Assembly (NCBI GenBank): GCA_965240325.2
Contig: OZ251243.1
Location: 124,001-188,000 of the forward strand
Reading direction: 5' to 3'
DNA length: 64,000 bases
Origin: Rebecca billardiae RCC1528
Lineage: Eukaryota; Protista; Haptophyta
The notes under the pieces were generated by a model that was given only the letters and a program-made list of their open reading frames with translations, ran no database searches and was not told where the DNA came from. The position numbers and the translations under genes were made by a program. Below are positions 16,681 to 30,766 of the stretch, in pieces (position 1 is the first letter of the stretch; every line of letters starts with the position of its first letter).

Positions 16681-17081
16681 TGTTGTATTAATTCCGAATT
16701 TCCTCCGTGCACGATTTCTTTTCTTCTCCAGGCGCTTGGATCCAACCGCCAGGAGAGGTCGAGTCCCAGGTACTACTCGCTGTCGTACCTGCCCTCCCTG
16801 AACCGGCACGAGCGCGCTCGGCCCCTAATCCTATTGCATTCGCCGCTGTCCGCAGGCGAACGCAAGCCGCCGGGTACGTATGTCCGTTTTCCCCCGGCGC
16901 TATTGGTCTAACGAGCAGTAACGACCTATCAGTTTACTGGTGCCGTTTGCTTTTGCACCTGTGTGGGACGACTCCCGCACCGCCCGCTCGTCCGCACGGA
17001 CGACGCTGCTGACGACGTCCGCAGGGACACTGTGATAAGCCCCTGCGTGACCGGGGAACTGGTAAGGCGGAATAAACATCA
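16681..17081 (+). repeat. 5' LTR of copia element A
   Basis: TGTTGTATTAATT...GGAATAAACATCA, repeated at 22385-22538 plus 29918-30164. Confidence 0.95.
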
Positions 17082-19197
17082 TGAGCTCAATCGTGCGTAA
17101 CCACGGACCGCCGGGCATGGCCCACCCAACCGGTCGCAGCGCCGCGGGCGCCGCGGACAGCGGATCCGCGCGGGCGACGACGTCCGCGCGCGAGCTCGGC
17201 CTCGAGCAGCTGGGCGACAGCGCGAAGACCAACCAGATGCTCACTGGCGTGACGAACGAGTTTGCCAAGTTCGCAAGCTCCAACTCCAGCGTGAGCACCG
17301 ACCTCTTCACCAGAACGGGCGGCAGCCTGAACCTGATGCCGGAGAGCACGTTCGTGACGCTTGCGCGGCAGCTGCCCTCGCTCGTCCCGATCACGAGCAA
17401 GATCAAGGAGAAGAACGAGCAAATCGCCACGGTGGACGCGGCGACGCGCTCCAAGGAGAAGGTGCTCCTCGTCCGCGCGAAGGTCGCGCAGCGAGAGCTC
17501 GACGGCAAGAACGAGCCGATGACACCGGTACCACTCGCGGCCGCGCCGGCGTTCCCGCCCGCGGCAGCGCCCTCTGACGCGTCTGCGGACGGCGACGACG
17601 CGAGCAGCGGGCCGGCGAGCGGTCTCCCGAGCGTTGAGGCGACGGTGAAGTTCGATGGCATGTCCGTCACGGCGGAGGAGCTGCACGAGCTCGTCGAGGC
17701 CAAGCTCGCGGAGATCACGGCCGAGAGGGACATCACCATCGGTAAGATTGCGATACTCGGAGAGGGCTTTGCTGGCGTCTCCGCGCTCGACAGCCCGAAC
17801 CTGATCTACCAGAAGGTGTATGAGAACTCCGCGGCCGTGCTGCTGAAGCTGTTGAAGTCGACGCTGAACGCGGAAGCGCAGCAGTACGTGGACGCGTGCT
17901 CGCGGCGCAAGGGCATGGGCCCCTACCCGAAGGCTGCCGAGCAGCTGCAGGCGTGGTGGATTGAGCTGCGTGAGCTGCGCGACGAGGTGAGCGTCGACCA
18001 CCTGATGGACATCATGGCCCCGTACCTGAACACGGGGGAGAGCGAGCACAAGACATTCTCGGACCTGCCGTCGTACCTGGCGTACTCGAAGGAGCGGCAG
18101 CTCGTATTCGAGCGCCTGCGGGCGCCGGCCGAGGCGCTCGAGCTGGCCCGCGTGCTGCAGCCGCTGCGCAGCATGAAGGGCGACCTCTCGCTCAAGTTGA
18201 AGCTCGACAAGTTCCTCAAGATGCCGTACGCGGAGGTGACGAACGCGACGCTCGTCATGATGAACTCCGACCTCGCGAGCCACCCGCCGCGCGGTGTGAT
18301 CACCGTGGGCAACGTGAAGGAGCGCCCGCCCCCGCGCCAGCCGCCGAAGCAGCCGGCGCACGAGGTGTCCGGCGCGACGACGCCGCACGTCCCGCCAAAG
18401 CTGAAGTGCGACTTGTGTAAGGGGAACCACTACTACGGCAAGATGTGCTCGCAGTTCAAGCCGGACGGCCCGGTGCCGCCAGCGGTGGTCGCTGCGCGCG
18501 AGGAGCGCGCTGCTGCGCGCGCGCGTGCGAGGCAGGAGCAACCGGGCGCGGGTGCGCGCCGCGCCGCGGACCGCGGGGCCATCATCGTGCCCGCGGGTGT
18601 CCCCGGCCGGAGCATCGCACCGGGCGTCCGCGCGGTCCAGGCGATCGAGAACATTGACGAGGTGGAGCCTCACGACGAGGTGATCGGCGGGCGCGTCGCC
18701 GCCGCGGTCGTCGAGGACAAGGGGGGCGCCGAGCCGCCCAACCGAGCGAACGGGCGCATTGACTCCGCTGCCGACCGGTCAGTCGGCGGGATGTGGATGG
18801 TCGACGCCGGTCTTGTGGAGAACTTGACGGCGCAGAACGGCGCGCTCATCGGCTTTGATGGCGGGGCCGCGGCCTCGTCGCTCAAGGGTGAGATCACCGC
18901 GCGCATGCTGAGCGTGGACGGCTCCGACTCGCAGCTGATCAAGTGCGAGATCTGGATTGCCGAGGGCGTGGAGACCATCCTGCTGTCCGCGGACGCGCTC
19001 GCGAGCGTCGGCGCGACGACCACCATCTCCAAGTGGCGGCAGTCGTCGTGCGACTTCACGGACGTCGGAGGCGGCTACATCAAGATCGGCTCGGACGCGC
19101 GCGTCATCCTCGAGCTCCAGCCCGTCGAGGAGGCGGCCGCCGCCGCGGCGGGGCGCGTCGAGCCGGAGGCCGAACGCGCGCCCGCGCCCGCGCCTGT

Positions 19198-19235
<38 letters not shown>

Positions 19236-19261
19236 TCGGGCGCGCGCCGGGAAACGAGTAG
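17081..19261 (+). CDS. gag: Copia A ORF1: Gag plus aspartic protease (726 aa)
   Basis: Zinc-knuckle-like CDLCKGNHYYGKMC, protease motif IDSAA and later ILLSADAL. Ends CCG GGA AAC GAG TAG. Confidence 0.9.
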
Positions 19262-19306
19262 GGCCCGAGCGCGCGGCGGCTGAGCGAGCTGCCGCCGGGC
19301 GTGCGC
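19249..19306 (+). promoter_or_regulatory. Predicted -1 programmed ribosomal frameshift signal of copia A (G GGA AAC plus downstream stem-loop/pseudoknot)
   Basis: Heptamer GGGAAAC at 19249-19255 in the correct phase, 7-nt spacer, then pairing GCCCG(19263-67)/CGGGC(19296-300) and GCGGCGGCT(19273-81)/AGCTGCCGC(19287-95). Confidence 0.8.
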
Positions 19307-22300
19307 GCACGCCCGGTGACAAGGAGCTCGGCCTGTGGGCCGCCCGCTTGGGCACGACGAACAAGACTTTGCTGACTCGCACTTGGCGCGCCACCGCTGG
19401 CATGCCGGAGGCGACGATGGCGCGCGCGCCGCTGGACACGCTGTCCGGCGCGCACATGAAACGACGGCCCTTTAACCGGCCCATGCCCCGCGCGACGCAC
19501 CCGCGCGAGGTGACGCACATGGACGTGGTGTCCGTGTCGAAGATTGACTTGCCGATCGGCGAGGCCGGGATCCCGGTCGGCATGAAGTACGCGCTGGTGT
19601 GTGTAGATGACTACTCGCGCCGGATGAGCGTCTACTTCTGCAAGTTGAAGTCGCAGATACCTGACCTGATCGCGATGTATTTTCGCGAGATGGGAGCGCA
19701 CGAGCTGTACGGCTCGCACATCGAGCTTGGACCTGGGTTCAAGCGATTCCACATCCACACCGACGGCGGCACCGAGCTGAACTCGGAGCGCGTGTCCGAG
19801 CTGCTGCTGCAGCTTGGCCTCGCCGCCAACGTGACGAGCGCGCCCGACACTCCCTCCTCGAATGGGGTGGCGGAGCACGCGATCCAGACTCTGGTGCGCG
19901 ACACGATTGCGCGCCTTGCGATGACGGGCATGCCTGCCCAGCATTGGCACTATGCGATGCGCCACGCGTGCGCGAGCAGAAACCGCTTGGCGTCCAGGCG
20001 AATCATGCGCGACGGCGCGCTGATGTTCGTGACGCCCTACGAGCTCTTTTTTGGCAAGCCGCCGGACATGCGTCACGTGATCGTGTTCGGCGCCCCGTGC
20101 CGTGTGGTCCTGCAGGGACTCGAGAAGCAGCGGCGGGGCAAGCTGGGCATGCCGACGGTGCGTGGCCGCGTCCTCGGTCACGGCATCGACGGCTCCCAGA
20201 TCGACAAGACGTTCCGGCTGCTGCTGGGGTACGTCGTGCTGCTCGATGACGGGCGCGTGATTCACTCCAAGCACGTGTACATTGATGAGCGGTCGCTGGT
20301 CGAGGGGGGGCACACTCCGTTCGCGACCAGCTATGACGGTGCCGAGCCCGAGGGAGACGCCGCTGACGGCGAGCTCACCGACGAGGGCGACGGGCATTTT
20401 GAGATTGAGGACGGTGCAGCCGACGACGGCGGCGCTGCTGCTCATGACGACGGGGGCGCGGCGAGCGAAGCTGCGCGACCGAGCGCCGACGGCGATGACG
20501 CCGGAGGCGATGACGACGCACGAGCTGGTGAGTCCGCGGCGCCCGAGCTGCCGCGCGACTACGACCCGATGCGACGAGACCGAGCGAGGCGGAGCAGACC
20601 CGCCGCGCAGACGGTGCAGGCTGTGACCGAGGCAGCGTTCCAGGCCGCGGGCGAGGAACCTACCGAGGAGAACAGCTTCGAGGCATTCGCTGCGACGACA
20701 ATCGCGCGGATGAATGGTGTGCCGATCACCATCCCCACGACGTGGGACGAGGCGATGAAATCGCCCGAGGCCAAGCTCTGGATGCAGGCCTGCCATGACC
20801 ACCTCGACGCGCACGGCGTGAGACACACGTTCTTCGAGGTGATTGTTCCGGACACCACGCGCACGATTCCTGTCAAGTGGGTGTTCGACGTGAAGACGCT
20901 TCCCGATGGCGAAGTGATCAAGTTCAAGGCGCGGCTGGTAACCCAGGGGTTCCGCCAGCGTGAGGGCATCGACTTCAATGAGGTGTTCGCCCCGACGATA
21001 CGACCAGAACAGCTGCGGCTGATGCTCGCGGTCGCGCTCAAGGCCAAAGGCGTCTCGATGACGGACGCGGCGAGCGCCAAGATCGTGGAGATGCGACCCG
21101 CCGACGTGCGGCACGCATACCTGAACAGCGACCTGCCGGAGGGCGAGGAGGTGATGACACCGCTCCCGCCTGGCTACACCCCGAAGAGCTCGACGCCGCT
21201 CGGCTCGAAGGTGGTCGCGAAGTTTGTGAAGGCGCTCCCAGGCATGCGCCAGGCCGGGCGCGTGTGGTACCTACACTTGCGTAAGTGTTTGCTCGAACAT
21301 GGGTTCGAGCCGTGCCCGAGCGCGCCGTGCATCTACTCGAAGGCAGTCGATGGCGGCTACGTGTTCGTCGGTCACTTTGTCGACGATCTGCTGATGATGA
21401 ACATCTCGAAGGACAAGAACGCATTGGACGCGCTGATGACGGCGTTGCTGACGCACTACGAGATGCAGGGCGCGGACTGCCTGAGCAAGTTCCTTGGCGC
21501 CGAATTTGAGACCACGGTGGACGGACTTTTTACCCACCTGAACCAGTACATCGGTGATGTGTGCGAGCGCTTCCACCTGAGTGGAGAGCGCCACCCACCG
21601 ACCCCCGAGTGCAGCGAGACGCGCGAGATCCCCCGCCCGCTGCAAGCCCTCCTGCTGCGCGCTGACCGCCAGCACTACCAGGAGATGACCGGTGCCCTCA
21701 TGTACTGCATGACGACGTGTCGCCCCGACATCGCGCACGCCGTGAACATGCTGGCACGCCGGATGTCCAATCCCCGGCTCTACGACTTGACCGCCGCGAA
21801 GCGCACGCTCCGATACTTGCTCGGCACGCGTCGGCGCGGCATCCTCTTCCGGCACGCGACGCACGCACAACACCCTGATTTGGTGGCGTACGCGGACTCG
21901 GACTGGGCGAACGATCGTGAAGATCGACGTTCTACGACGGGATACCTTGTTATGTACAACGGGGTCCCGATCTCGTGGCACACCGGACTGCAGAGCGTGG
22001 TCGCGTTGTCTACGTGCGAGGCGGAGTACATCGCGCTGAGCGAGTGCTGCCGCGAGGTGATCTACCTGCGCGACCTGGTCACGTTTTTGAACGAGCCGGT
22101 CGTGGAGCCCACGACGGTGATCTACGAGGATAACCAGGGCACGATCGATTTGACGAACAACCCGGTGCACCACAAGCGCACCAAGCACATTGACGTGAAG
22201 TACCATTTCACGCGGCGCGCGCAAGCCGACGGCGCCGTGCTGATCCAGAAGGTGCCGACCGACGACAACCGGTCCGACATCATGACCAAGGCTACCGCGA

Positions 22301-22371
22301 CGAGTACTTTTCTCAAGCACGTCGTGGCGATACTGCATGCTGTTCCACCACCTCCGCCGCCTTCGGCATGA
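19249..22371 (+). CDS. pol: Copia A ORF2: integrase-reverse transcriptase-RNase H, entered by a predicted -1 frameshift
   Basis: In the -1 frame relative to ORF1. LWAARLG pre-integrase; IN DDE (THMDV, HTDGG, NGVAEH); RT (KARLVTQGFRQREGIDF, FVDDLL); RNase H (YADSDWA, STCEAEY, EDNQG, DIMTKA). Confidence 0.93.
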   Translation, partial: GKRVGPERAAAERAAAGRARTPGDKELGLWAARLGTTNKTLLTRTWRATAGMPEATMARAPLDTLSGAHMKRRPFNRPMPRATHPREVTHMDVVSVSKIDLPIGEAGIPVGMKYALVCVDDYSRRMSVYFCKLKSQIPDLIAMYFREMGAHELYGSHIELGPGFKRFHIHTDGGTELNSERVSELLLQLGLAANVTSAPDTPSSNGVAEHAIQTLVRDTIARLAMTGMPAQHWHYAMRHACASRNRLASRRIMRDGALMFVTPYELFFGKPPDMRHVIVFGAPCRVVLQGLEKQRRGKLGMPTVRGRVLGHGIDGSQIDKTFRLLLGYVVLLDDGRVIHSKHVYIDERSLVEGGHTPFATSYDGAEPEGDAADGELTDEGDGHFEIEDGAADDGGAAAHDDGGAASEAARPSADGDDAGGDDDARAGESAAPELPRDYDPMRRDRARRSRPAAQTVQAVTEAAFQAAGEEPTEENSFEAFAATTIARMNGVPITIPTTWDEAMKSPEAKLWMQACHDHLDAHGVRHTFFEVIVPDTTRTIPVKWVFDVKTLPDGEVIKFKARLVTQGFRQREGIDFNEVFAPTIRPEQLRLMLAVALKAKGVSMTDAASAKIVEMRPADVRHAYLNSDLPEGEEVMTPLPPGYTPKSSTPLGSKVVAKFVKALPGMRQAGRVWYLHLRKCLLEHGFEPCPSAPCIYSKAVDGGYVFVGHFVDDLLMMNISKDKNALDALMTALLTHYEMQGADCLSKFLGAEFETTVDGLFTHLNQYIGDVCERFHLSGERHPPTPECSETREIPRPLQALLLRADRQHYQEMTGALMYCMTTCRPDIAHAVNMLARRMSNPRLYDLTAAKRTLRYLLGTRRRGILFRHATHAQHPDLVAYADSDWANDREDRRSTTGYLVMYNGVPISWHTGLQSVVALSTCEAEYIALSECCREVIYLRDLVTFLNEPVVEPTTVIYEDNQGTIDLTNNPVHHKRTKHIDVKYHFTRRAQADGAVLIQKVPTDDNRSDIMTKATATSTFLKHVVAILHAVPPPPPPSA

Positions 22372-22538
22372 TGTCGAGGGGGGGTGTTGTATTAATTCCG
22401 AATTTCCTCCGTGCACGATTTCTTTTCTTCTCCAGGCGCTTGGATCCAACCGCCAGGAGAGGTCGAGTCCCAGGTACTACTCGCTGTCGTACCTGCCCTC
22501 CCTGAACCGGCACGAGCGCGCTCGGCCCCTAATCCTAT

Positions 22539-23259
22539 TATTGGGTAAACGCGAGCTCCAAGCGTCTCGAGCCCTGCTAAAAGCTCACCGGCACGTCCTC
22601 GGGCGCGTCGTCGGTGACGCCCACGAAGGCAATCTCGACCCTCGCTCCTCTGACGAGCGAAGCTAATCCTCCTGCCGCAACCAACTTTCGGTTGCGCAGG
22701 GTGACACGGCGTTTTGCGGCCCGGCTCGGGAATCTTGTAACCTTCCTGAGCCCCGCTTCCGTGCGTCCGCCAATCGCAGGCGTTACCGACGCACCGCCGT
22801 AAGCTCATCTTTCCCCCAGGTACTCGGTAATGTCATCGGACCTGGGTAAGCTGCGCACGGACCCATGATCCCGGATTCTCGATTCTCAAAACTGAGAATC
22901 CGGGCGTCCATGAATGAAGTGATCGAGTCCGTTGTTCCTTGGACTCTTCCACGATGGCGCCCGCCTGTGCCGCCGGCGTGCCATCCGTGCCGCGTGCGCC
23001 GGGCCGTACCGCCCGCGCACGCGCCGCGTCCGTGTCGCTCCGCGTCCGCGCTGCCGCGTCCGCGCTCCGCGTCCACGTCGCTCCGCGCCAGCGCTGCTGC
23101 GCTCGCGCTCCTGCCGCCGCGCGCGCCGCGCGCGCGCGCCGCCAGAGCCAGCCACTGCGTAGCTGATGCCGCCGGCCCGCCTGGTGCGGCGCCGGCCCTG
23201 ACGTCCCAGCGGCGACGCCATCTGCTGAGATGCGCGCCCCAGGCTGCGTCAGCTCAACA
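22539..23259 (-). repeat. 3' LTR of copia element B
   Basis: Direct repeat of 29192-29912; the ORF track gives identical translations for both copies. Confidence 0.95.
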
Positions 23260-23295
23260 CCCCCCCTCGACAGCCATAGCCGCGAGCTGCGCCGC

Positions 23296-26200
23296 TTACC
23301 GCGCGCGCGTCGGGTGTCGGTCCACCATGATGGCGTCGACGTGCCGCTTGAACGTCGCACCGTCCGTCGCCTTCGTCATGATGTCAGAGTGGTTGAGCGA
23401 GGTGTGTACCTTGACCACCTTCACCTTGCCACCCTCCTGCGCGTCACGCACATAGTGATGCTTGATCTCGATGTGCTTCGAGCGCTTGTGGTGCACAGGA
23501 TTCTCCACGAGGTCGATAGCCCCCTTGTTGTCCTCTCGCACCTCCGTCGCGGCCCGCGGCGGCTGCCGCATGGACTCGAGTATGCTCCGCAAGTAGCTCA
23601 CCTCGCGGCAGCAATCGCTCAGCGCGACGTACTCCGCCTCCGTCGAGCTCAGCGAGACTGTACCTTGCAGCCCGCTGTGCCACGACACCGGCGCCCCATT
23701 GTAGAACACAATGTATCCACCCGTCGACCTGCCCTTGGTCTCCACCGGATTGCTTGCCCAATCGGAGTCAGCGAAAGCAAGTAGGTCGGGGTGCTCGGAA
23801 TCTGTCGCAAACTTGAACAAGATTCCCAATCGCGGGCATCCACGTAAGTAGCGCAGCACGCGCTTCGCACTTACCAGATCCACCGCCCGCGGACATGACA
23901 TGCGTCGCGTCAGCATGTTCACCGCGTGCGCGATGTCCGGCCGCGCCGTGACCATCGCAAACATGAGACATCCCACCATCGCCTGGTAGTTCTCAATCTC
24001 CGCGCGCTGCAGCAACGCCTCGTCGTCGTCGCTCAGCTGCGCCCGCGCCGCCGGCTCCGGCGTGCGCGCCGGCGTGCTTGCGTTCAAACCGAACCGCTGA
24101 AGCACGCTCTCGACGTACGGCCCCAGATGCATCAGGATGCCGTCGTCATGAACTTCAAACACGGCGCCCAGGAACTTATCGAGCCGCTCACTCAGCTTGA
24201 TCTCGTAGTGCTCCTTCAGGTCAGCCGCCAGCTTCTCCACCGCGCGCGCGTCGCGCGTCAGGTTGAGAAACAGCAAGTCGTCGACAAAGCCGCCCGCGAT
24301 GATGAACTCGCCCGGCGCCGACTCCTTGACGTAGATGCACGGCGCACTCGGACACTCCGAGAAGCCGCGCGCGAGCAGCTGGGTGCGGTGCGTGCGATGC
24401 CACGCGCGCCCAGACTGGCGTAGGCCCGGATACGCCTTCAGGCTCCGGCCCACGACTTTGTACCCCGGCGGCGCCTGCGTGCTCGGCACGTAGCCCGGCG
24501 GGAATGAGAAGAGAGGCCGCTCATCCGGCTTCAACTCCGAGTTGAGGTACGCGTCCTTGACGTCGCCCTTCGACAGTATGCCCAGCGCCGCAACCGACGC
24601 TGCACCCAAGTCGACCCTCGCGCCCGCCTGCTGAGCGGCGATCGCAACGAGTAGTCGCACTTGTTCCGGCCGGATCGTCGGAGCAAAGACCTCCTGAAAG
24701 TCGATCCCCGGCCGCTGTAGGTTCCCCAGTAGCACCGACCGCGCCTTGAAGCGCGTCACCTCGCCCTCCGGGTTCGACTTGACGTCAAAGACCCATTGGC
24801 TCGGCAACACCCGCGTGCCCTCCGGAACCACCACCTCTTCCGAGGTGCCGAGCAACTTGTGACCTTCCAAGTGCTCGAGCATGGCGCCCTGCCACTGGGG
24901 CGCCTCCGCCGACCGCATCGCCTCGCGATAGTTCGTCGGCACCTTCACGTTGATCTTCTGGAACACCGACGCGGCGCTGACGACGGCAGTAAGCAGCTGC
25001 GGCCGTCGGCGCGACGTCCGATCCCTGCGAAGCGGATCGTGTCCCATATCCAGACCGGGCGGCGGCGCGTCCTCGATCACGCCGTCGTCACCGTCTGCGC
25101 CGCGCGGCGGCCCGCCAGCATCTGCTGCGGCCCCGCGCCGTGATTCCGTCGGCGGTATCTGATCCTGCCGACCCGGCTGCGTCATCGACGCGCCTGCCCC
25201 GTCACGCCCGCCCTGCGGCGTCGGCGTCGACGGCTCTGCGCCAGCGCTGCTGCACCCGCGATGTCCCGCGTCCACGCTGCTGCGCCCGCGCCCCGACGTT
25301 GACGCATCTGCGTCGTCGTCGTACCCGACGTCGAACTCTGTCGCGTCGTCATTCCCGGCGTCGGCTGGCGTCTCGCCGCCGTCGCCGTCCTCGTCCTCAC
25401 AGTCGGCGTCACCACCGACCGGACGAAGTCCGCCGCTTACCGCGGCGCCGTCACCATCACCCACGTACGCGCCACCGTCAGGTGCGCCCAGCGACGAGTG
25501 CCCCCCCTCGACCAGGTCGGTCTCGTCGATGCGTACATCACGTGAGTGAACGAGACGTCCGTCGTCTAAACGACATACGTACCCAAGCACGTAGCGCCAT
25601 GTACCGCGCCACTGCACGCCGTGCCCACCCCAGAGATAGACACGTCCGGGTAGTGCGCGCTGCTTCAGCTGCCCCAATGCATTGCGCCGTGCGCCCAGCA
25701 TCAGCACGCGGCAGCGCGCGCCAAACGCCACGTGATGCTTCCACGTCGGACGTTTGCCAAAGAACAGCTCATCCGGCGTGAGCCACTCAATGTCTCCATC
25801 GTCACGAACGATACCACGTGACGCCAGTCGATTGCGCGACGCGCATGCGTGCCACGCCGCGTAGTGCCAATCGACCCTCGAGACTCCACGCGCAACGACC
25901 GTGGCGCGCAGTCTCGACTTCAGCGTGCGGATAGCGCGTTCCGCCACGCCATTCGAGCTCGGCGAGTCGGGCGCCGACGTGACCGTCGACGAGAACCCAA
26001 GCTTCGCCAGCTCACCCTCGACGTACGTACTCAGCAACGTCGAGCCACCGTCGGTGTGAATATGGCGTCGCGCCATAGTACACCCCGACGCCAGGACCCA
26101 ATGCGACATGTGCATGGCCCCTGTTCCAAGCAACTGCGCGTACCAGCGGAATGCCCGACCAACCTCGGCGTCATCCAAGCTGCGTAGCGCGTACACTTGC

Positions 26201-26580
26201 CATCGACGTGAATGCCCATCGATGAATATGATCCCATGAGGATACCCTCCACGTGCGCCATCGGCCCCAACTGGTAAGTCGATGCGCGCCATAGAGAAGA
26301 TGTCGACGTGCGTCACCTGCCCAGGGTAGTGCGCCGTCGGCATCGCGTCCGCGAACGACCGCCGCGTCATGCCCGCCGCCGACTGCTCGTCGAGCGACTC
26401 ACGCCGCGCGTTCGCCCCCTCCATCCCCTCGGCCACGCGTCGCGTGCGCTCGAGTAGACGTTGGTCATTGGTGCCCGTTCGAACCGACCAAGTGCGCAAC
26501 CACGCCGGATCAGCGCCTCGCGCCGCCTCCGTAGTGTTTGTGGTTCGCACCTGCGCGGGTTCCGGGCTTAGGCGTTTGGG
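23296..26580 (-). CDS. pol: Copia B ORF2: integrase-RT-RNase H, entered by a predicted -1 frameshift
   Basis: IN (THVDI, HTDGG, NGVAERAIRTL), RT (FKARSV, FVDDLL), RNase H (FADSDWA, SSTEAEY, EDNKG, DIMTKA); in the -1 frame relative to ORF1. Confidence 0.93.
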   Translation of the reverse strand, partial: PKRLSPEPAQVRTTNTTEAARGADPAWLRTWSVRTGTNDQRLLERTRRVAEGMEGANARRESLDEQSAAGMTRRSFADAMPTAHYPGQVTHVDIFSMARIDLPVGADGARGGYPHGIIFIDGHSRRWQVYALRSLDDAEVGRAFRWYAQLLGTGAMHMSHWVLASGCTMARRHIHTDGGSTLLSTYVEGELAKLGFSSTVTSAPDSPSSNGVAERAIRTLKSRLRATVVARGVSRVDWHYAAWHACASRNRLASRGIVRDDGDIEWLTPDELFFGKRPTWKHHVAFGARCRVLMLGARRNALGQLKQRALPGRVYLWGGHGVQWRGTWRYVLGYVCRLDDGRLVHSRDVRIDETDLVEGGHSSLGAPDGGAYVGDGDGAAVSGGLRPVGGDADCEDEDGDGGETPADAGNDDATEFDVGYDDDADASTSGRGRSSVDAGHRGCSSAGAEPSTPTPQGGRDGAGASMTQPGRQDQIPPTESRRGAAADAGGPPRGADGDDGVIEDAPPPGLDMGHDPLRRDRTSRRRPQLLTAVVSAASVFQKINVKVPTNYREAMRSAEAPQWQGAMLEHLEGHKLLGTSEEVVVPEGTRVLPSQWVFDVKSNPEGEVTRFKARSVLLGNLQRPGIDFQEVFAPTIRPEQVRLLVAIAAQQAGARVDLGAASVAALGILSKGDVKDAYLNSELKPDERPLFSFPPGYVPSTQAPPGYKVVGRSLKAYPGLRQSGRAWHRTHRTQLLARGFSECPSAPCIYVKESAPGEFIIAGGFVDDLLFLNLTRDARAVEKLAADLKEHYEIKLSERLDKFLGAVFEVHDDGILMHLGPYVESVLQRFGLNASTPARTPEPAARAQLSDDDEALLQRAEIENYQAMVGCLMFAMVTARPDIAHAVNMLTRRMSCPRAVDLVSAKRVLRYLRGCPRLGILFKFATDSEHPDLLAFADSDWASNPVETKGRSTGGYIVFYNGAPVSWHSGLQGTVSLSSTEAEYVALSDCCREVSYLRSILESMRQPPRAATEVREDNKGAIDLVENPVHHKRSKHIEIKHHYVRDAQEGGKVKVVKVHTSLNHSDIMTKATDGATFKRHVDAIMVDRHPTRAR
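26489..26580 (-). promoter_or_regulatory. Predicted -1 frameshift signal of copia B (C CCA AAC plus pseudoknot-like structure)
   Basis: Minus strand reads CCC CCA AAC GCC TAA GCCCGGA. CCGGA(26565-61) can pair with TCCGG(26509-05), and CAGGTGCGAACCAC(26553-40) with GTGGTTGCGCACTTG(26503-26489). Confidence 0.8.
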
Positions 26581-29192
26581 GGCGGCGCAGCGCCAATGCG
26601 CCCCCGCCCCGCGCCCACGCGCCGCACTGGCGCCCTGCGCCGTGCGCGCGCCTCCGCCGGCGCATCGCCGACGTCTGGCCCCACCTGGCGCCGTACGATC
26701 TCGGCGCGCAGCGTGGAATCGCGCGGCAGCTGCACGACGCCGCCTCCCAGCGCCGTAAAGTCCGCAGTGTTGCCGCGCTGCGAGTAGTGGAACTCGATGC
26801 CTGCGTCCGCGCAGTGCTCGACCGACAGCAGCGGCGCCGTGACGCGCTGCGACGCCCACGCCTCGATCTCGAGCGTGAGGACCTTGTCGCTGTCGTCGTC
26901 CGCCGCAAGCTTGACCACCAGGGTCCCGCGGTGAGTGACCTGCTCCCGCGCACCGTTCCCCCACTCGATCTGGCATGCGCCGTGCACCGGGGTAAGGTTC
27001 GTCAAATCCTCGGTCATGGCGATGTTCTTCCGTGCGCCAGTGTCAAACACCAACGCCCGCGTGTTGTCCTCCGGCTGCGCCACGCGTGCCTCGGCCGCCC
27101 GCGCCGCGACGATCTCGATGTCCTCGTCGCGCTGCGCCCTGCCGCCGATAGCCGCGCCAATAGGCGCCAAGCCGAGTCCGGCGCCGGTGCCGCCGCCGTC
27201 TCCGGCGTCTGCGCCACCGTCGCCACCAACGGCGCCGTCGGGCTCGTCACCCTGCTCGGGAGCGAACGCGACCTGCGTGCGGACCGTGCCGCCGCCGTTG
27301 CCATTACCGACCACGGCGCGGGTGCTGCCCCCCGCACCGCCGCCGCCACCGCCACCGCCGCTCCGATGTGAGCCACGGCTGCGATCCGACCGCGTCGACG
27401 CCGCGTCATCGCCAGCGTTCGAGTCGCGATCAGCCTGCGTCACCTGCGGGCAGTAACGCTTGATGTGCCCCACGGCGCCGCACTTGTAGCAGCGCGGCCC
27501 GTGCGCGTCGTCGGAGTCGCCGTGGCCTCCGCGGCCGGTGCCGCGGCCAGCACCGCCGCCACCGCCGCCGCCGCGACCTCCGCCGCCGCCACCACGGCCA
27601 GCCGGCGACGTCGCGTCGCCGCCGCCGCCACCACCCGCCGACGCCGCCGCCGCCTGCGCCAGGCGGAGCCCGTCGATTGGGTGCGCGCGGGTAGCGCCGC
27701 CGCCTCCTGGCGTGCGGCCACCCGCCCCTGGGCGCCCAGGGCCGCCGCGGTCAATCCGCTTGCCCTTGGAGAAGTCCCAGTCCTCGAACTTGCCGTTGAG
27801 CTCGTGCACGAGCTCCTGCACGTCGAAGTTCGTCACGGTCCTGTAGTCCTTCGACTCGTACCGCGTCCGCATCTCGATGCCCGCGCCCACCGACGGAATG
27901 AACTCGATGAGCCGCGCAAGCATCTCCGCCGCTGGCGCTGCGTCACTCAGCTCCTGCAGCAGCACGTGGTTGTGCTGTAGCACCTGGAAGAGCTCGAGTG
28001 CGCCGACGCCGTCCTTGCCGCAGTCCGGCAGGACCGTCCGATGCCAGCGTGCCCGCACCGACATGTACTTCCGCATGTCGTCGGGCTTGCGCATGCGCAG
28101 GATCGCCTTCCACAGGTACAGAAACTCGCGCCCCGGCGTAAGTGCGCCCCGGCGCGCGCGCTCCTCCTGCACCTCCGGCTGCGTCTCCATGAGGCGGTTG
28201 ATGTGCTGCCACGCAGCCTCCGTCACCCACGACCGCAGCTCGGTGCGTAAGAAAGCCGTCCCTTTCTCGTACTGCGCCCCGGCGTACTTGGCGGGGTCCG
28301 CCTCGTCGCCGTCCGGCGCTGCCTCCAACACGCTCTGTCGGAGCTTGATGTCCAGCATAGCATGCTCGCTCGCCTGCCGCTCATGCATCTGCTCCTCGGT
28401 CTCGCGCTCGCGGCGGTAGAGCTCGCGCGCGCGCGGATCGAGCGTCACGGCAGCGCCACCCGTGGGCGCCGCGCCACCGATCCCGCCGGCGCCGCCCGTA
28501 GGCACCGCGCCGACGCCGGCGCCGCCCACAGGCGTCGCGCCGTCAGTCCCAGCCGGCGCACCTGCCGCGCCGCCTGTGCCCACACCCGGACCGGGTGTAC
28601 CGGCCGCCGGACCCGGAAAAATTCCGGATCCGCCGCCCGCCGCCGGACCTGAACCCGGTCCGGTCGCCGTCGGGCCGCCCGGAGTGGCTAAACCACTCCC
28701 AGCGCCCGCCGAGGCAGCCTGCGCGTAGCTTGGCGCCTGCCTCGCCCCCGCCGCCGCCGCCGCGCGTTCCGCCGCGGCCCGGCGCTCGGCGTGCTCGCGG
28801 CGCTCGTGCTCGTGGCGATGATCGAGCAGCCGCTGCTGCAGCGCGTAGTTCTCACGCGCCAGGTCCATCCGCTCGGCACTGACCTTGATCATCTTCGCCG
28901 CGGATGGGTTGAATGTCTCCCACGTCGAGTTGTACTCCTCGAGCGTGTTGATGCGGTGCTCCGCGTTCGGGCCGTGCGTCACGATGATGCCGTTCAGTGC
29001 GGACATCGTAGCACCTTGCCCCGCCGGTAGCGCCGCCAGCTTGCTCGCCGATTGCGCGAGCCAGCGCTGCTGATTGCCCTTGTCGTTGAGCATCCCCACG
29101 TCGACCGAGCCGTGCATCCGGCCGCTCGTGCCCATCGGCGCGATCGATGAGAAAGCGCCGCGCGTACGATCCCTCCCGATCGCTGCATGCAT
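26568..29192 (-). CDS. gag: Copia B ORF1: Gag plus protease (874 aa)
   Basis: CCHC knuckle CYKCGAVGHIKRYC, protease motif LVFDTGA and later PLLSVE. Ends PPPNA*. Confidence 0.9.
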   Translation of the reverse strand: MHAAIGRDRTRGAFSSIAPMGTSGRMHGSVDVGMLNDKGNQQRWLAQSASKLAALPAGQGATMSALNGIIVTHGPNAEHRINTLEEYNSTWETFNPSAAKMIKVSAERMDLARENYALQQRLLDHRHEHERREHAERRAAAERAAAAAGARQAPSYAQAASAGAGSGLATPGGPTATGPGSGPAAGGGSGIFPGPAAGTPGPGVGTGGAAGAPAGTDGATPVGGAGVGAVPTGGAGGIGGAAPTGGAAVTLDPRARELYRRERETEEQMHERQASEHAMLDIKLRQSVLEAAPDGDEADPAKYAGAQYEKGTAFLRTELRSWVTEAAWQHINRLMETQPEVQEERARRGALTPGREFLYLWKAILRMRKPDDMRKYMSVRARWHRTVLPDCGKDGVGALELFQVLQHNHVLLQELSDAAPAAEMLARLIEFIPSVGAGIEMRTRYESKDYRTVTNFDVQELVHELNGKFEDWDFSKGKRIDRGGPGRPGAGGRTPGGGGATRAHPIDGLRLAQAAAASAGGGGGGDATSPAGRGGGGGGRGGGGGGGAGRGTGRGGHGDSDDAHGPRCYKCGAVGHIKRYCPQVTQADRDSNAGDDAASTRSDRSRGSHRSGGGGGGGGAGGSTRAVVGNGNGGGTVRTQVAFAPEQGDEPDGAVGGDGGADAGDGGGTGAGLGLAPIGAAIGGRAQRDEDIEIVAARAAEARVAQPEDNTRALVFDTGARKNIAMTEDLTNLTPVHGACQIEWGNGAREQVTHRGTLVVKLAADDDSDKVLTLEIEAWASQRVTAPLLSVEHCADAGIEFHYSQRGNTADFTALGGGVVQLPRDSTLRAEIVRRQVGPDVGDAPAEARARRRAPVRRVGAGRGRIGAAPPPNA

Positions 29193-29912
29193 ATTGGGTA
29201 AACGCGAGCTCCAAGCGTCTCGAGCCCTGCTAAAAGCTCACCGGCACGTCCTCGGGCGCGTCGTCGGTGACGCCCACGAAGGCAATCTCGACCCTCGCTC
29301 CTCTGACGAGCGAAGCTAATCCTCCTGCCGCAACCAACTTTCGGTTGCGCAGGGTGACACGGCGTTTTGCGGCCCGGCTCGGGAATCTTGTAACCTTCCT
29401 GAGCCCCGCTTCCGTGCGTCCGCCAATCGCAGGCGTTACCGACGCACCGCCGTAAGCTCATCTTTCCCCCAGGTACTCGGTAATGTCATCGGACCTGGGT
29501 AAGCTGCGCACGGACCCATGATCCCGGATTCTCGATTCTCAAAACTGAGAATCCGGGCGTCCATGAATGAAGTGATCGAGTCCGTTGTTCCTTGGACTCT
29601 TCCACGATGGCGCCCGCCTGTGCCGCCGGCGTGCCATCCGTGCCGCGTGCGCCGGGCCGTACCGCCCGCGCACGCGCCGCGTCCGTGTCGCTCCGCGTCC
29701 GCGCTGCCGCGTCCGCGCTCCGCGTCCACGTCGCTCCGCGCCAGCGCTGCTGCGCTCGCGCTCCTGCCGCCGCGCGCGCCGCGCGCGCGCGCCGCCAGAG
29801 CCAGCCACTGCGTAGCTGATGCCGCCGGCCCGCCTGGTGCGGCGCCGGCCCTGACGTCCCAGCGGCGACGCCATCTGCTGAGATGCGCGCCCCAGGCTGC
29901 GTCAGCTCAACA
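29192..29912 (-). repeat. 5' LTR of copia element B (TG...TA in element orientation)
   Basis: Minus strand TGTTGAGCTGACG...GTTTACCCAATA, followed directly by the gag ORF. Confidence 0.93.
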
Positions 29913-30766
29913 CCTATTGCTTTCGCCGCTGTCCGCAGGCGAACGCAAGCCGCCGGGTACGTATGTCCGTTTTCCCCCGGCGCTATTGGTCTAACGAGCA
30001 GTAACGACCTATCAGTTTACTGGTGCCGTTTGCTTTTGCACCTGTGTGGGACGACTCCCGCACCGCCCGCTCGTCCGCACGGACGACGCTGCTGACGACG
30101 TCCGCAGGGACACTGTGATAAGCCCCTGCGTGACCGGGGAACTGGTAAGGCGGAATAAACATCATATATGGATGCCGATATTCAGGATTTGCCATTATTT
30201 GTCGCCTGATGAGGAATGGGTTGGATGTGATGGGAGCGAGTGAATCGACAATCTTGCAATAATTCATGACCGCCCCGTGCCTCGCTTGTTTTGGCGCCCG
30301 CGCTCATGATAAAAGCTCGCATACGATCGTTCAAGATTGCGACGGTCTCCACTCTCCAATACCCACCCGATGCGAACGTATTCTGTGAGCGCCGCGACGG
30401 TGTGCCGGGGATCGGACGATCAGATTGTCCCGGTGCGCCAATCTACAGCGACTGCATGCAGGCTGATGTGCGCCGTGCGTGTGCGTGCCGTCACACCGTA
30501 GGCGAGTTGGTGTGCGCTTGCGGTCGGTGACCTGTGGGGCGGGGTATTACGGATCATCGCAACGCCGCCTGCTTAGCGGCCGTGCGAGCAATCGCGTGTC
30601 AGCCAGTGGCGGCACGTGTGTCGGTCTGCCGACTGATGCATCACCTGTGCTTTTTATTCTGAGTATATTCATGATATGTATTATAAATATAAATATTTAT
30701 ATATTATAACAAATTGCTCTGTGTTGCGACGCACTGAGCACGACATCATCCCGCGAATCGACGACA

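What the first reader, a model, noticed from the sequence alone, without database searches (positions are those of the whole stretch)
26489..26600. Copia element B shows the same frameshift cassette (C CCA AAC - 1 codon - stop - GCCCG)
Seen: B has unrelated LTRs and a divergent Gag, yet breaks frame at the same PR/IN position in the same -1 direction. It uses a different but canonical heptamer, CCCAAAC (26580-26574). Layout is conserved: A = GGGAAAC GAG TAG GGCCCG, B = CCCAAAC GCC TAA GCCCGG. Both have interleaved stems (S1-5', S2-5', small hairpin, S1-3', S2-3') consistent with a pseudoknot. Inference: the same layout in two young, otherwise intact, divergent elements argues for a lineage-wide recoding mechanism rather than decay.
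Basis: partly seen in the sequence, partly recalled or inferred. Interest (0 to 1): 0.85.

Follow-up and report, generated by a model that had tools for sequence, protein, structure and literature searches.

The report
Copia frameshift signal between protease and integrase
A whole branch of Copia-type jumping genes in a GC-rich haptophyte alga and in environmental (metagenome) DNA splits its polyprotein after the protease and carries a conserved ribosome-slippage signal there, so the break is a working expression device, not decay.

Summary
Element B (minus strand) has C CCA AAC GCC TAA GCCCGG at 26580-26562. The heptamer is in the ORF1 frame and ORF2 (IN-RT-RH) lies in the -1 frame. Element A has G GGA AAC GAG TAG GGCCCG at 19249-19267.

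- All 39 B-type and 7 A-type signals in the genome are identical over 26 nt, and no copy has fused frames.
- An independent run's contigs show no indel at the site.
- In 13 of 14 related families (A, B and 12 from metagenomes and other public run assemblies, about 40-65% ORF2 identity), one in-frame XXXAAAZ heptamer lies 0-9 codons before the ORF1 stop and the integrase is in the -1 frame.
- The heptamers are GGGAAAC, GGGAAAG, GGGAAAU, CCCAAAC and AAAAAAC. Their background rate elsewhere in these elements is 4 per 9,581 codon positions.
- The 13 families placed on the tree (L066 and L068 were not included) form one clade, next to single-ORF Copia families of the same genome.
- Eleven of 13 have a stable stem starting about 1-8 nt after the heptamer.
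- In five (A, B, L061, L062, L072) this is a long nested hairpin. Its 3' arm is the coding sequence of a conserved integrase N-terminal motif, and compensatory changes are seen.

There is no RNA, protein or reporter evidence. First readers of this scan flagged the same signal on two other pieces of this genome.

The parts
26574..26580 (-). Element B slippery heptamer C CCA AAC (X XXY YYZ in the ORF1 frame)
   Evidence: Only in-frame XXXYYYZ in the 475-nt overlap. Identical in all 39 genomic copies.
26568..26573 (-). 6-nt spacer GCC UAA; it contains the ORF1 stop codon (26570-26568)
   Evidence: A 6-nt spacer before GCCCG is also seen in A, L061, L062 and L064.
26473..26567 (-). Predicted stimulatory RNA: a nested extended hairpin of about 95 nt that starts with GCCCGGAACC immediately after the stop
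   Evidence: MFE -54.3 kcal/mol, z -2.8 to -4.0. Lowest z of 97 windows along the element. The B2 30-nt insertion lies in its internal loop, and an A>G change keeps a pair as G-U.
26470..26505 (-). 3' arm region: the codons of the conserved integrase N-terminal motif AWLRTWSVRTGT, complementary to the 27 nt that follow the heptamer
   Evidence: Duplex -31.9 kcal/mol. Matched or beaten by 0.2% of shuffles and by 0 of 239 other 27-mers of the element.
26568..29192 (-). Element B ORF1 open frame (Gag with a CCHC knuckle, then protease). The true start codon is not determined.
26670..27074 (-). Protease domain of B (FDTGAR ... LLS ... G), inside ORF1 and upstream of the shift site
   Evidence: Alignment A3. 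AF2 model pLDDT 67. Top fold matches are FIV, XMRV, M-PMV and RSV proteases. Weak PF22936 hits in 5 relatives.
23296..26579 (-). Element B ORF2 frame from the shift site onward (linker, integrase DDE core, RVT_2 reverse transcriptase, RNase H), in the -1 frame relative to ORF1
   Evidence: At least 35 near-identical copies in the genome keep this frame open and unfused.
29192..29912 (-). Element B 5' LTR (721 nt, TGTTG...CAATA)
   Evidence: 100% identical to the 3' LTR. TSD CCTAT.
22539..23259 (-). Element B 3' LTR, preceded by the polypurine tract GAGGGGGGG
19249..19255 (+). Element A slippery heptamer G GGA AAC; GAG then the stop TAG (19259-19261) follow
   Evidence: Identical in all 7 genomic copies.
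19263..19353 (+). Element A predicted nested extended hairpin that starts with GCCCGAGCG; its 3' arm CGCUUGGGC is the Arg-Leu-Gly codons of the integrase motif
   Evidence: MFE -70.6 kcal/mol, z -3.5. Rank 4 of 87 windows. Duplex test: 0 of 500 shuffles as good.

Best explanation
This is a programmed -1 ribosomal frameshift signal of a distinct clade of Ty1/copia LTR retrotransposons.

Proposed mechanism. Ribosomes translating ORF1 (Gag-protease) mostly terminate at the stop 0-9 codons after the heptamer. A fraction pauses on a GC-rich stem that begins about 1-8 nt downstream. The P- and A-site tRNAs then slip back one base on X XXA AAZ (C CCA AAC in B, G GGA AAC in A). Translation continues in the -1 frame through a Pro/Ala/Arg-rich linker into integrase, reverse transcriptase and RNase H.

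Expected products. Abundant Gag-PR and scarce Gag-PR-IN-RT-RH. This resembles the way alpharetroviruses keep protease in the gag frame. For B the predicted transframe junction is ...PPPN|RLSPEP....

Shown here: the sequence layout, its conservation, the clade, the predicted structures and the compensatory changes.
Inferred: the slippage itself, its efficiency and the stoichiometric role.
For: 1. In-frame canonical heptamer, -1 ORF2 and adjacent stop in both window elements.
2. Activity with the break in place. There are 39 B-type and 7 A-type copies with a 26-nt signal identical in every copy. LTR pairs are 100% identical. At least 35 B copies and 6 A copies keep ORF2 open and never fused.
3. 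It is not an assembly error. Contigs of another run cross the site with no indel. Short-read metagenome relatives show the same arrangement.
4. In 13 of 14 families (ORF2 identity about 40-65%) there is one in-frame XXXAAAZ 0-9 codons before the ORF1 stop, with the integrase in the -1 frame. The heptamer changes only among slippery forms: GGGAAAC x6, AAAAAAC x3, GGGAAAG x2, GGGAAAU, CCCAAAC. The encoded residues and the linker are not conserved. The background rate of such heptamers is 4 per 9,581 codon positions.
5. In L062 and L066 the overlap is only 37 and 49 nt, which pins the shift to the heptamer. In A, L062 and L064 the -1 frame has no AUG before the conserved integrase motif.
6. The 13 families on the tree are one clade (SH-aLRT 99), sister to a single-ORF Copia family of the same genome. 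Other Copia families there have open frames of about 1,950-2,290 aa.
7. Eleven of 13 families have a stable stem starting 1-8 nt after the heptamer. The site window ranks 1 of 97 (B) and 4 of 87 (A) by z-score.
8. In A, B, L061, L062 and L072 the 27 nt after the site are complementary to the integrase-motif codons. Shuffle fractions are 0-0.03 and other-27-mer fractions are at most 0.004. L061 and L062 share 20 pairs, with 3 double-sided compensatory changes and none broken.
9. [quoted passage not shown]
Against: - There is no direct evidence of frameshifting. No RNA run holds the element, and there is no proteomic or reporter data.
- Two families (L068, L073) have no predicted stable downstream structure.
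- The stimulatory structure is not conserved as one fold across the clade (local hairpins versus a long hairpin). True covariation statistics were therefore not possible. The compensatory evidence rests mainly on one pair of families.
- Folding z-scores are moderate (-2 to -4.8) in very GC-rich RNA.
- GGGAAAG (L061, L062) is, from my own knowledge of eukaryotic in-vitro studies, a weak A-site context.
- L065 carries the same A AAA AAC plus hairpin as its close relative L069, but its integrase is in the +1 frame because the linker differs by 53 nt. At least one copy therefore does not fit.
- The families share ancestry, so the heptamer counts reflect conservation and not independent origins.
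Confidence: 0.85

Rival explanations
1. The frames are joined by something other than ribosomal slippage: a small intron or RNA editing, transcriptional slippage by the polymerase, or separate translation of ORF2 by internal initiation or termination-reinitiation.
For: No transcript data could be obtained, so splicing or editing is not directly excluded. B, L061, L066 and L068 have an AUG in the -1 frame upstream of the integrase motif. Other Copia elements use splicing to balance Gag and Pol (PMC5580714).
Against: None of these mechanisms predicts a conserved in-frame X XXA AAZ followed at a fixed short distance by a stem in 13 families. A3 runs are too short for known polymerase slippage (my knowledge). 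In A, L062 and L064 no AUG precedes the conserved integrase motif in the -1 frame, and in L062 that frame opens only 27 nt before the heptamer. DNA contigs show no alternative joined form.
Confidence: 0.08
2. The break is decay: A and B are dead copies that happen to carry a 1-nt deletion at similar places.
For: Single-base frame breaks are the commonest lesion in old retrotransposons. L065 and L076 show that defective copies of this clade exist.
Against: LTR pairs are identical, TSDs are intact and both long ORFs are open. Dozens of near-identical copies all carry the same break. The same -1 relation, heptamer and position occur in 11 further families from unrelated samples, and the families on the tree form one clade.
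Confidence: 0.02
3. Assembly artefact: a systematic homopolymer under-call (C5A3 or G3A3) in a long-read assembly mimics a -1 shift.
For: A 1-nt deletion error gives exactly an apparent -1 frame. The site contains short homopolymers.
Against: Contigs of a separate run cover 26534-27186 and 25513-26565 with no inserted or deleted letters. That run may come from the same sample as the assembly. Relatives assembled from short-read metagenomes show the same arrangement. The ORF1 frame ends in a stop codon within 0-9 codons in every family.
Confidence: 0.01

Closest known systems
Canonical -1 programmed ribosomal frameshifting of retroviruses and animal LTR retrotransposons (X XXY YYZ heptamer, spacer, 3' stem-loop or pseudoknot; for example G GGA AAC in PEG10, A AAA AAC in MMTV gag-pro)
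   Same: Same heptamer classes, the same 5-8 nt spacing to a stable 3' structure, the same -1 overlap of a structural ORF and an enzymatic ORF, and often a stop codon just after the site (PMC5009743).
   Different: The host element is Ty1/copia, a group described as mostly single-ORF or using +1 shifting, readthrough or splicing (PMC5580714). In five families the stimulator appears to be a 60-100 nt nested hairpin closed by pairing to the integrase coding sequence, not a compact pseudoknot.
Alpharetrovirus (RSV/ALV) gag-pro / pol organisation
   Same: Protease is translated in the Gag frame, so it is made in the same amount as Gag. A -1 shift just after protease gives the rarer polymerase fusion (my knowledge). 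In the elements here PR lies in ORF1, about 100-160 aa before the site.
   Different: In Copia order the first domain after the shift is integrase, not reverse transcriptase. The two are unrelated in sequence, so the arrangement most likely arose independently.
Saccharomyces Ty1/Ty2/Ty4 +1 frameshift (CUU AGG C)
   Same: The same superfamily, and the same purpose of lowering Pol relative to Gag (PMC5580714).
   Different: The direction is +1, not -1. The mechanism depends on a rare tRNA and not on tandem slippage with a structure. The shift lies between Gag and protease, so protease is in the Pol frame.
Single-ORF Copia strategies (Drosophila copia, Arabidopsis EVD and barley BARE1 splicing; Ty5 Pol degradation; Tca2 stop codon)
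   Same: The same need for an excess of Gag. Other Copia families in this very genome have a single open frame of about 2,000-2,290 aa.
   Different: Those use RNA processing, protein turnover or a stop codon, not slippage. They have no frame break.

Membership tests
-1 programmed ribosomal frameshift signal | Heptamer X XXY YYZ in phase with the upstream (0) frame | tested here: met
   C CCA AAC (B) and G GGA AAC (A). It is in phase and unique within the overlap in the 7 families checked and in phase in 6 more.
-1 programmed ribosomal frameshift signal | The downstream ORF is in the -1 frame, overlaps ORF1, and can only be reached without its own initiation | tested here: met
   A -1 relation in 13 of 14 families. 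Overlaps are as short as 37 and 49 nt. A, L062 and L064 have no AUG before the conserved motif.
-1 programmed ribosomal frameshift signal | Stable RNA structure beginning about 5-9 nt 3' of the heptamer | tested here: met
   Present in 11 of 13 families, with predicted stems starting at +1 to +8. z is -1.5 to -4.75 in most. The L069 hairpin is not distinguishable from shuffles (z -0.8). L068 and L073 have none predicted.
   Nested hairpins account for all arms. No pseudoknot-capable predictor or probing was available.
-1 programmed ribosomal frameshift signal | Phylogenetic conservation of the site with compensatory change in the structure | tested here: met
   The site is conserved across the clade. 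L061 versus L062: 3 double-sided compensatory pairs and 0 broken of 20. The 5'-arm/3'-arm complementarity is significant in 5 families. There are too few alignable sequences for R-scape-type statistics.
-1 programmed ribosomal frameshift signal | Measured frameshifting, or a detected transframe protein | not testable with these tools
   No RNA runs. No proteomics or reporter assay.
Ty1/copia (Pseudoviridae) LTR retrotransposon | Domain order Gag-PR-IN-RT-RH with an RVT_2-type reverse transcriptase | tested here: met
   zf-CCHC in ORF1. RVT_2 at E 3e-33 (B) and 1e-41 (A). Weak rve and SH3_retrovirus hits in A. PR motifs and fold upstream of the site. RNase H motifs in alignment A1.
Ty1/copia (Pseudoviridae) LTR retrotransposon | LTRs with TG...CA-type ends, a 5-bp target-site duplication and a polypurine tract | tested here: met
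   A: TGTTG...CATCA, TSD TATAT. B: TGTTG...CAATA, TSD CCTAT. Both have the tract GAGGGGGGG. B's LTR ends in TA, not CA.
Ty1/copia (Pseudoviridae) LTR retrotransposon | tRNA primer-binding site next to the 5' LTR | not tested
   This is the subject of other first-reader notes (s1-360847, s1-360848) and was not examined here.
Ty1-type +1 frameshift | pol in the +1 frame with a CUU AGG C-like site between Gag and PR | tested here: not met
   The frame relation is -1, and PR lies upstream of the site.

The most novel reading that the evidence does not exclude
A previously undescribed Copia clade, found here in a haptophyte genome and in metagenome and other public assemblies, has independently evolved an alpharetrovirus-like Gag-PR | IN-RT-RH expression plan. 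It is driven by canonical -1 frameshifting. In part of the clade the stimulatory RNA is a long hairpin whose 3' arm is the coding sequence of a conserved integrase N-terminal motif. That motif replaces the usual HHCC zinc finger. One stretch of sequence would then be under joint protein and RNA-structure selection.
Probability: 0.6. Interest if true: 0.6.

Novelty: new variant of a known kind. Interest (0 to 1): 0.55.

Why it matters
Copia elements are usually described as single-ORF, or as using +1 shifting, readthrough or splicing to make more Gag than Pol. This work adds a whole clade that uses classical -1 slippage. The clade has active, young copies, and the shift is placed after the protease, not before it.

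- It widens the known repertoire of Copia expression strategies.
- It gives a natural series of 13 related cassettes (five heptamer types, local and long-range stems) for studying frameshifting in haptophytes, where no such signal has been characterised as far as I could find.
- It warns annotators that these two-ORF elements are intact. One public gene model already bridges a related, internally deleted copy with predicted introns.
- It offers a rule for recognising autonomous copies of this clade in algal genomes and marine metagenomes.

Tried and rejected
- Pfam on the whole ORF1 of A and B found no protease. At relaxed thresholds there were only sub-threshold PF22936 hits, in 5 of 8 ORF1 tails.
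- A profile of the protease region found nothing meaningful among PDB sequences. The fold search gave retroviral proteases only at E 0.03-0.2, from a model of pLDDT 67.
- No RNA-seq run holds the element, so expression, splicing and editing could not be examined.
A-family copies and the PR/IN junction of the sister single-ORF families could therefore not be read. Only their open-frame lengths are known.
- Gao et al. 2003 (RNA 9:1422) is not held. Its content is cited through PMC5009743 and PMC5580714.
- Literature searches for a -1 site in Copia, or for haptophyte Copia elements with a frameshift, found no description.
- The first sliding-window run timed out. It was repeated at coarser settings.
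- L076 (an NCBI assembly) turned out to be an internal-deletion derivative lacking the site, so it is uninformative.
- L065 could not be reconciled with a single -1 shift.
- The idea that the stop codon position (one codon after the heptamer) is part of the conserved layout was rejected. It varies from 0 to 9 codons.
- The long-range pairing to the integrase motif is not universal. It is absent in L064, L066, L068, L069, L070, L073, L074 and L075.
Full report
**1. What is at the coordinates**

Read on the minus strand, 26580-26562 is CCCAAAC GCC TAA GCCCGG.
- ORF1 (29192-26568, 874 codons from the first ATG of the open frame) ends at that TAA.
- ORF2 (open 26976-23296) lies in the -1 frame relative to ORF1.
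- In the ORF1 frame the heptamer reads C CCA AAC, which is X XXY YYZ.
- Element A, on the plus strand, has G GGA AAC GAG TAG GGCCCG at 19249-19267. This string occurs once in the window and is not expected by chance. The -1 relation is the same.

**2. The two elements**

- B has 721-nt LTRs (29912-29192 and 23259-22539) that are 100% identical, and a 5-bp duplication CCTAT.
- A has 401-nt LTRs and a duplication TATAT.
- B is inserted inside A's 3' LTR, which explains three direct-repeat families in the region.
- Both share the polypurine tract GAGGGGGGG and the LTR start TGTTG.
- ORF1 of B carries a CCHC knuckle. ORF2 of both carries RVT_2 (E 3e-33 and 1e-41). A also has weak rve and SH3_retrovirus hits.
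- The apparent ATG at the LTR edge is only the junction of the LTR end and the next bases. The real Gag start is not determined.

**3. Is the break between protease and integrase?**

Yes.
- About 100-160 residues before the site, ORF1 has D(S/T)G, a downstream LLS and a conserved Gly. These align across 11 families.
- Five ORF1 tails give sub-threshold PF22936 (Copia protease barrel) hits that start at the DSG motif.
- An AlphaFold model of the B segment (pLDDT 67) finds FIV, XMRV, M-PMV and RSV proteases as its best PDB matches. Foldseek probability reaches 1.0, E is 0.03-0.2 and TM is about 0.5.
- After the site, the -1 frame runs through 11-95 unconserved, mostly Pro/Ala/Arg-rich residues into a conserved motif, W-x3-W-x2-R-x-G-T. 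The DDE integrase core follows.

**4. Not decay, not an artefact**

All have ORF2 open for 1,207-1,258 codons and never fused to ORF1.
- There are 6 full A copies with open frames of 1,159-1,170 codons.
- A 26-nt pattern across the signal, searched with up to 2 mismatches allowed, finds 39 B-type and 7 A-type sites. Every one has zero mismatches.
- The flanking 280 nt of B copies carry scattered substitutions and a subfamily-specific 30-nt insertion.
- Contigs of a separate public run cross the site (26534-27186) with no inserted or deleted letters. This argues against a homopolymer miscall.

**5. Relatives elsewhere**

- A protein search with B's ORF2 found 41-57% identical proteins of 1,045-1,171 aa that begin with the integrase. 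These are ORF2-only products.
- A profile search of 1.8 billion representatives found 38 at E <= 1e-30. Nearly all full-length ones likewise start at the integrase.
- I fetched DNA for 12 further families and read the junctions.

| Family | Site |
|---|---|
| L061 | G GGA AAG TAA |
| L062 | G GGA AAG TAG |
| L064 | G GGA AAC, stop 5 codons later |
| L066 | G GGA AAC, stop 6 codons later |
| L068 | G GGA AAC ACC TAA |
| L069 | A AAA AAC, stop 9 codons later |
| L070 | C CCA AAA AAC |
| L072 | A AAA AAC GGC CUG UAG |
| L073 | G GGA AAC |
| L074 | G GGA AAU |
| L075 | G GGA AAC |

- In all eleven of these, and in A and B, the integrase is in the -1 frame.
- In the seven families checked exhaustively, the heptamer is the only in-phase XXXYYYZ in the overlap.
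- In L062 and L066 the overlap is just 37 and 49 nt.
- Elsewhere in the coding sequence of seven families, in-phase heptamers with Y = A/T occur at 4 of 9,581 codon positions.
- The heptamer moves only among slippery forms, while the encoded dipeptide (GN, GK, PN, KN) and the surrounding linker are free to change. That is the signature of selection on slipperiness.

Exceptions:
- L065 has the same A AAA AAC plus hairpin as its close relative L069, but its linker is 53 nt longer, which puts the integrase in +1.
- L076, from a public genome assembly, is an internal-deletion derivative without the site.

**6. One clade**

- On a maximum-likelihood tree of ORF2 proteins, the 13 split-ORF families included form one group (SH-aLRT 99). 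L066 and L068 were not placed on the tree.
- This group is sister to a Copia family of the same genome whose copies have single open frames of 2,227-2,289 codons.
- Two more single-ORF families of the genome, and 13 ordinary Copia proteins, lie outside.
- This fits one origin of the split. The tree is midpoint-rooted and was built with the quick method.

**7. The RNA structure**

*Elements B and A*
- In B, six nucleotides after the heptamer (GCC UAA), an extended hairpin of about 95 nt begins with GCCCGGAACC. Its MFE is -54.3 kcal/mol and z is -2.8 to -4.0.
- A has the same plan after GAG UAG G. Its MFE is -70.6 kcal/mol and z is -3.5.
- Among 120-nt windows tiled along each element, the site window ranks 1 of 97 (B) and 4 of 87 (A) by z.
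- The arms are nested (outer stem, inner stem, apical hairpin, inner, outer), not interleaved.
- The 30-nt insertion of subfamily B2 sits in an internal loop. The accompanying A>G change turns an A-U pair into G-U.

*The 3' arm is coding sequence*
- The 3' arm of the outer and inner stems is the coding sequence of the conserved integrase motif.
- The 27 nt from +4 after the heptamer pair with those 36 nt far better than shuffles or other 27-mers of the same element in A, B, L061, L062 and L072. Shuffle fractions are 0-0.03 and other-27-mer fractions are at most 0.004.
- L061 and L062 share 20 pairs, with three double-sided compensatory changes, one single-sided and none broken. Substitutions are at 7 of 40 paired columns against 13 of 39 unpaired columns.

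*Other families*
- L064, L066, L069, L070, L074 and L075 have compact local hairpins whose main stems start at +4 to +8. In L064 and L070 a short outer helix begins at +1.
- Their z-scores are: L064 -3.4, L066 -2.4, L070 -4.75, L074 -3.7, L075 -1.55, and L069 not significant.
- L068 and L073 show nothing stable.

The stimulator is thus evolutionarily labile, while the heptamer and the spacing are kept.

**8. Mechanism proposed**

This is tandem -1 slippage on X XXA AAZ, stimulated by the downstream stem. It yields mostly Gag-PR and a minority of Gag-PR-IN-RT-RH.
- Classical heptamer sites are common in animal LTR retrotransposons (PMC5009743).
- Copia elements, in contrast, are described as using +1 shifting (Ty1), a stop codon (Tca2), splicing (copia, BARE1, EVD), protein turnover (Ty5) or a single ORF (PMC5580714).
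- I found no description of a -1 site in Copia, or of this clade, in the held literature. That is a limited library, and Gao et al. 2003 itself could not be read.
- The nearest functional analogue is the alpharetroviral arrangement, where protease is in the gag frame (my knowledge).

**9. What remains unproven**

- There is no RNA, ribosome-profiling, proteomic or reporter evidence. Efficiency is unknown.
- Splicing or editing is unlikely, given the conserved signal, but it is not directly excluded.
- Pseudoknot formation was not tested.
- Formal covariation statistics are not possible with the few alignable sequences.

**10. Verdict**

It is a new variant of a well-known mechanism and not a new kind of system. 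First readers of this scan flagged the same heptamer on two other pieces of this genome. These are further copies of the same families.

Noticed in passing
window 16681-30164: Element B (22539-29912, minus strand) is inserted inside the 3' LTR of element A and splits it into 22385-22538 and 29913-30164, with the target duplication CCTAT. Both elements have 100% identical LTR pairs, so two very recent insertions are nested.
   Followed up: yes
window 26400-26510 (-), 19330-19420 (+); alignment A1 columns 128-180: The integrase N-terminus of this clade lacks the usual HHCC zinc-finger residues. Where ordinary Copia has LWHxRLGH...CxxC, these elements have W-x3-W-x2-R-x-G-T ... LDxxSAAxM. The DDE core is intact.
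   Followed up: partly
window 18794-18811 (+); L066:2938-2955; L070:90-107: The protease active-site triplet is non-canonical in some apparently active families: D-A-G in element A, D-T-R in L066 and D-S-Q in L070. The other families have D-T/S-G.
   Followed up: no
L011, L016, L020-L030 (B2 copies); loose end at window 26534: A B subfamily carries a 30-nt in-frame insertion 38 nt after the ORF1 stop (ORF2 open frame 1,258 versus 1,248 codons). Both subfamilies have many copies. The variant is also seen as a loose end in the independent run.
   Followed up: yes
L065:1480-1840 versus L069:2333-2760: L065 keeps the A AAA AAC plus GC hairpin signal of its close relative L069 almost unchanged (34 of 36 nt). 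However, its linker is unalignable and 53 nt longer, which puts the integrase in the +1 frame. It may be a defective copy, a chimeric contig or a different route.
   Followed up: partly
L076:2501-5930 (public assembly GCA_019448385.1, contig JAGTXO010000101.1): An annotated 981-aa gene model joins Gag-PR and a truncated integrase of a related element by predicted introns. The copy has an internal deletion that removes the shift site and the first ~136 residues after it (linker and integrase N-terminal region).
   Followed up: partly
G000 copies listed (e.g. C19:403414-405573, C17:738316-739458): The A family has two groups of shortened derivatives. Their open frames are about 867 and 667 codons and match only from residue 322 or 655 of ORF2 onward. 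They are probably non-autonomous deletion derivatives.
   Followed up: no
L061:43-648: The last 200 codons of ORF1 in L061 look like a coiled-coil Gag region with no protease motif, although the frameshift signal and integrase are intact. Either this is a PR-less derivative or the PR lies elsewhere.
   Followed up: no
L066:3410-3530: L066 has a second GGGAAAC inside the integrase-motif codons (W G N). It is out of phase for shifting from the ORF2 frame.
   Followed up: no
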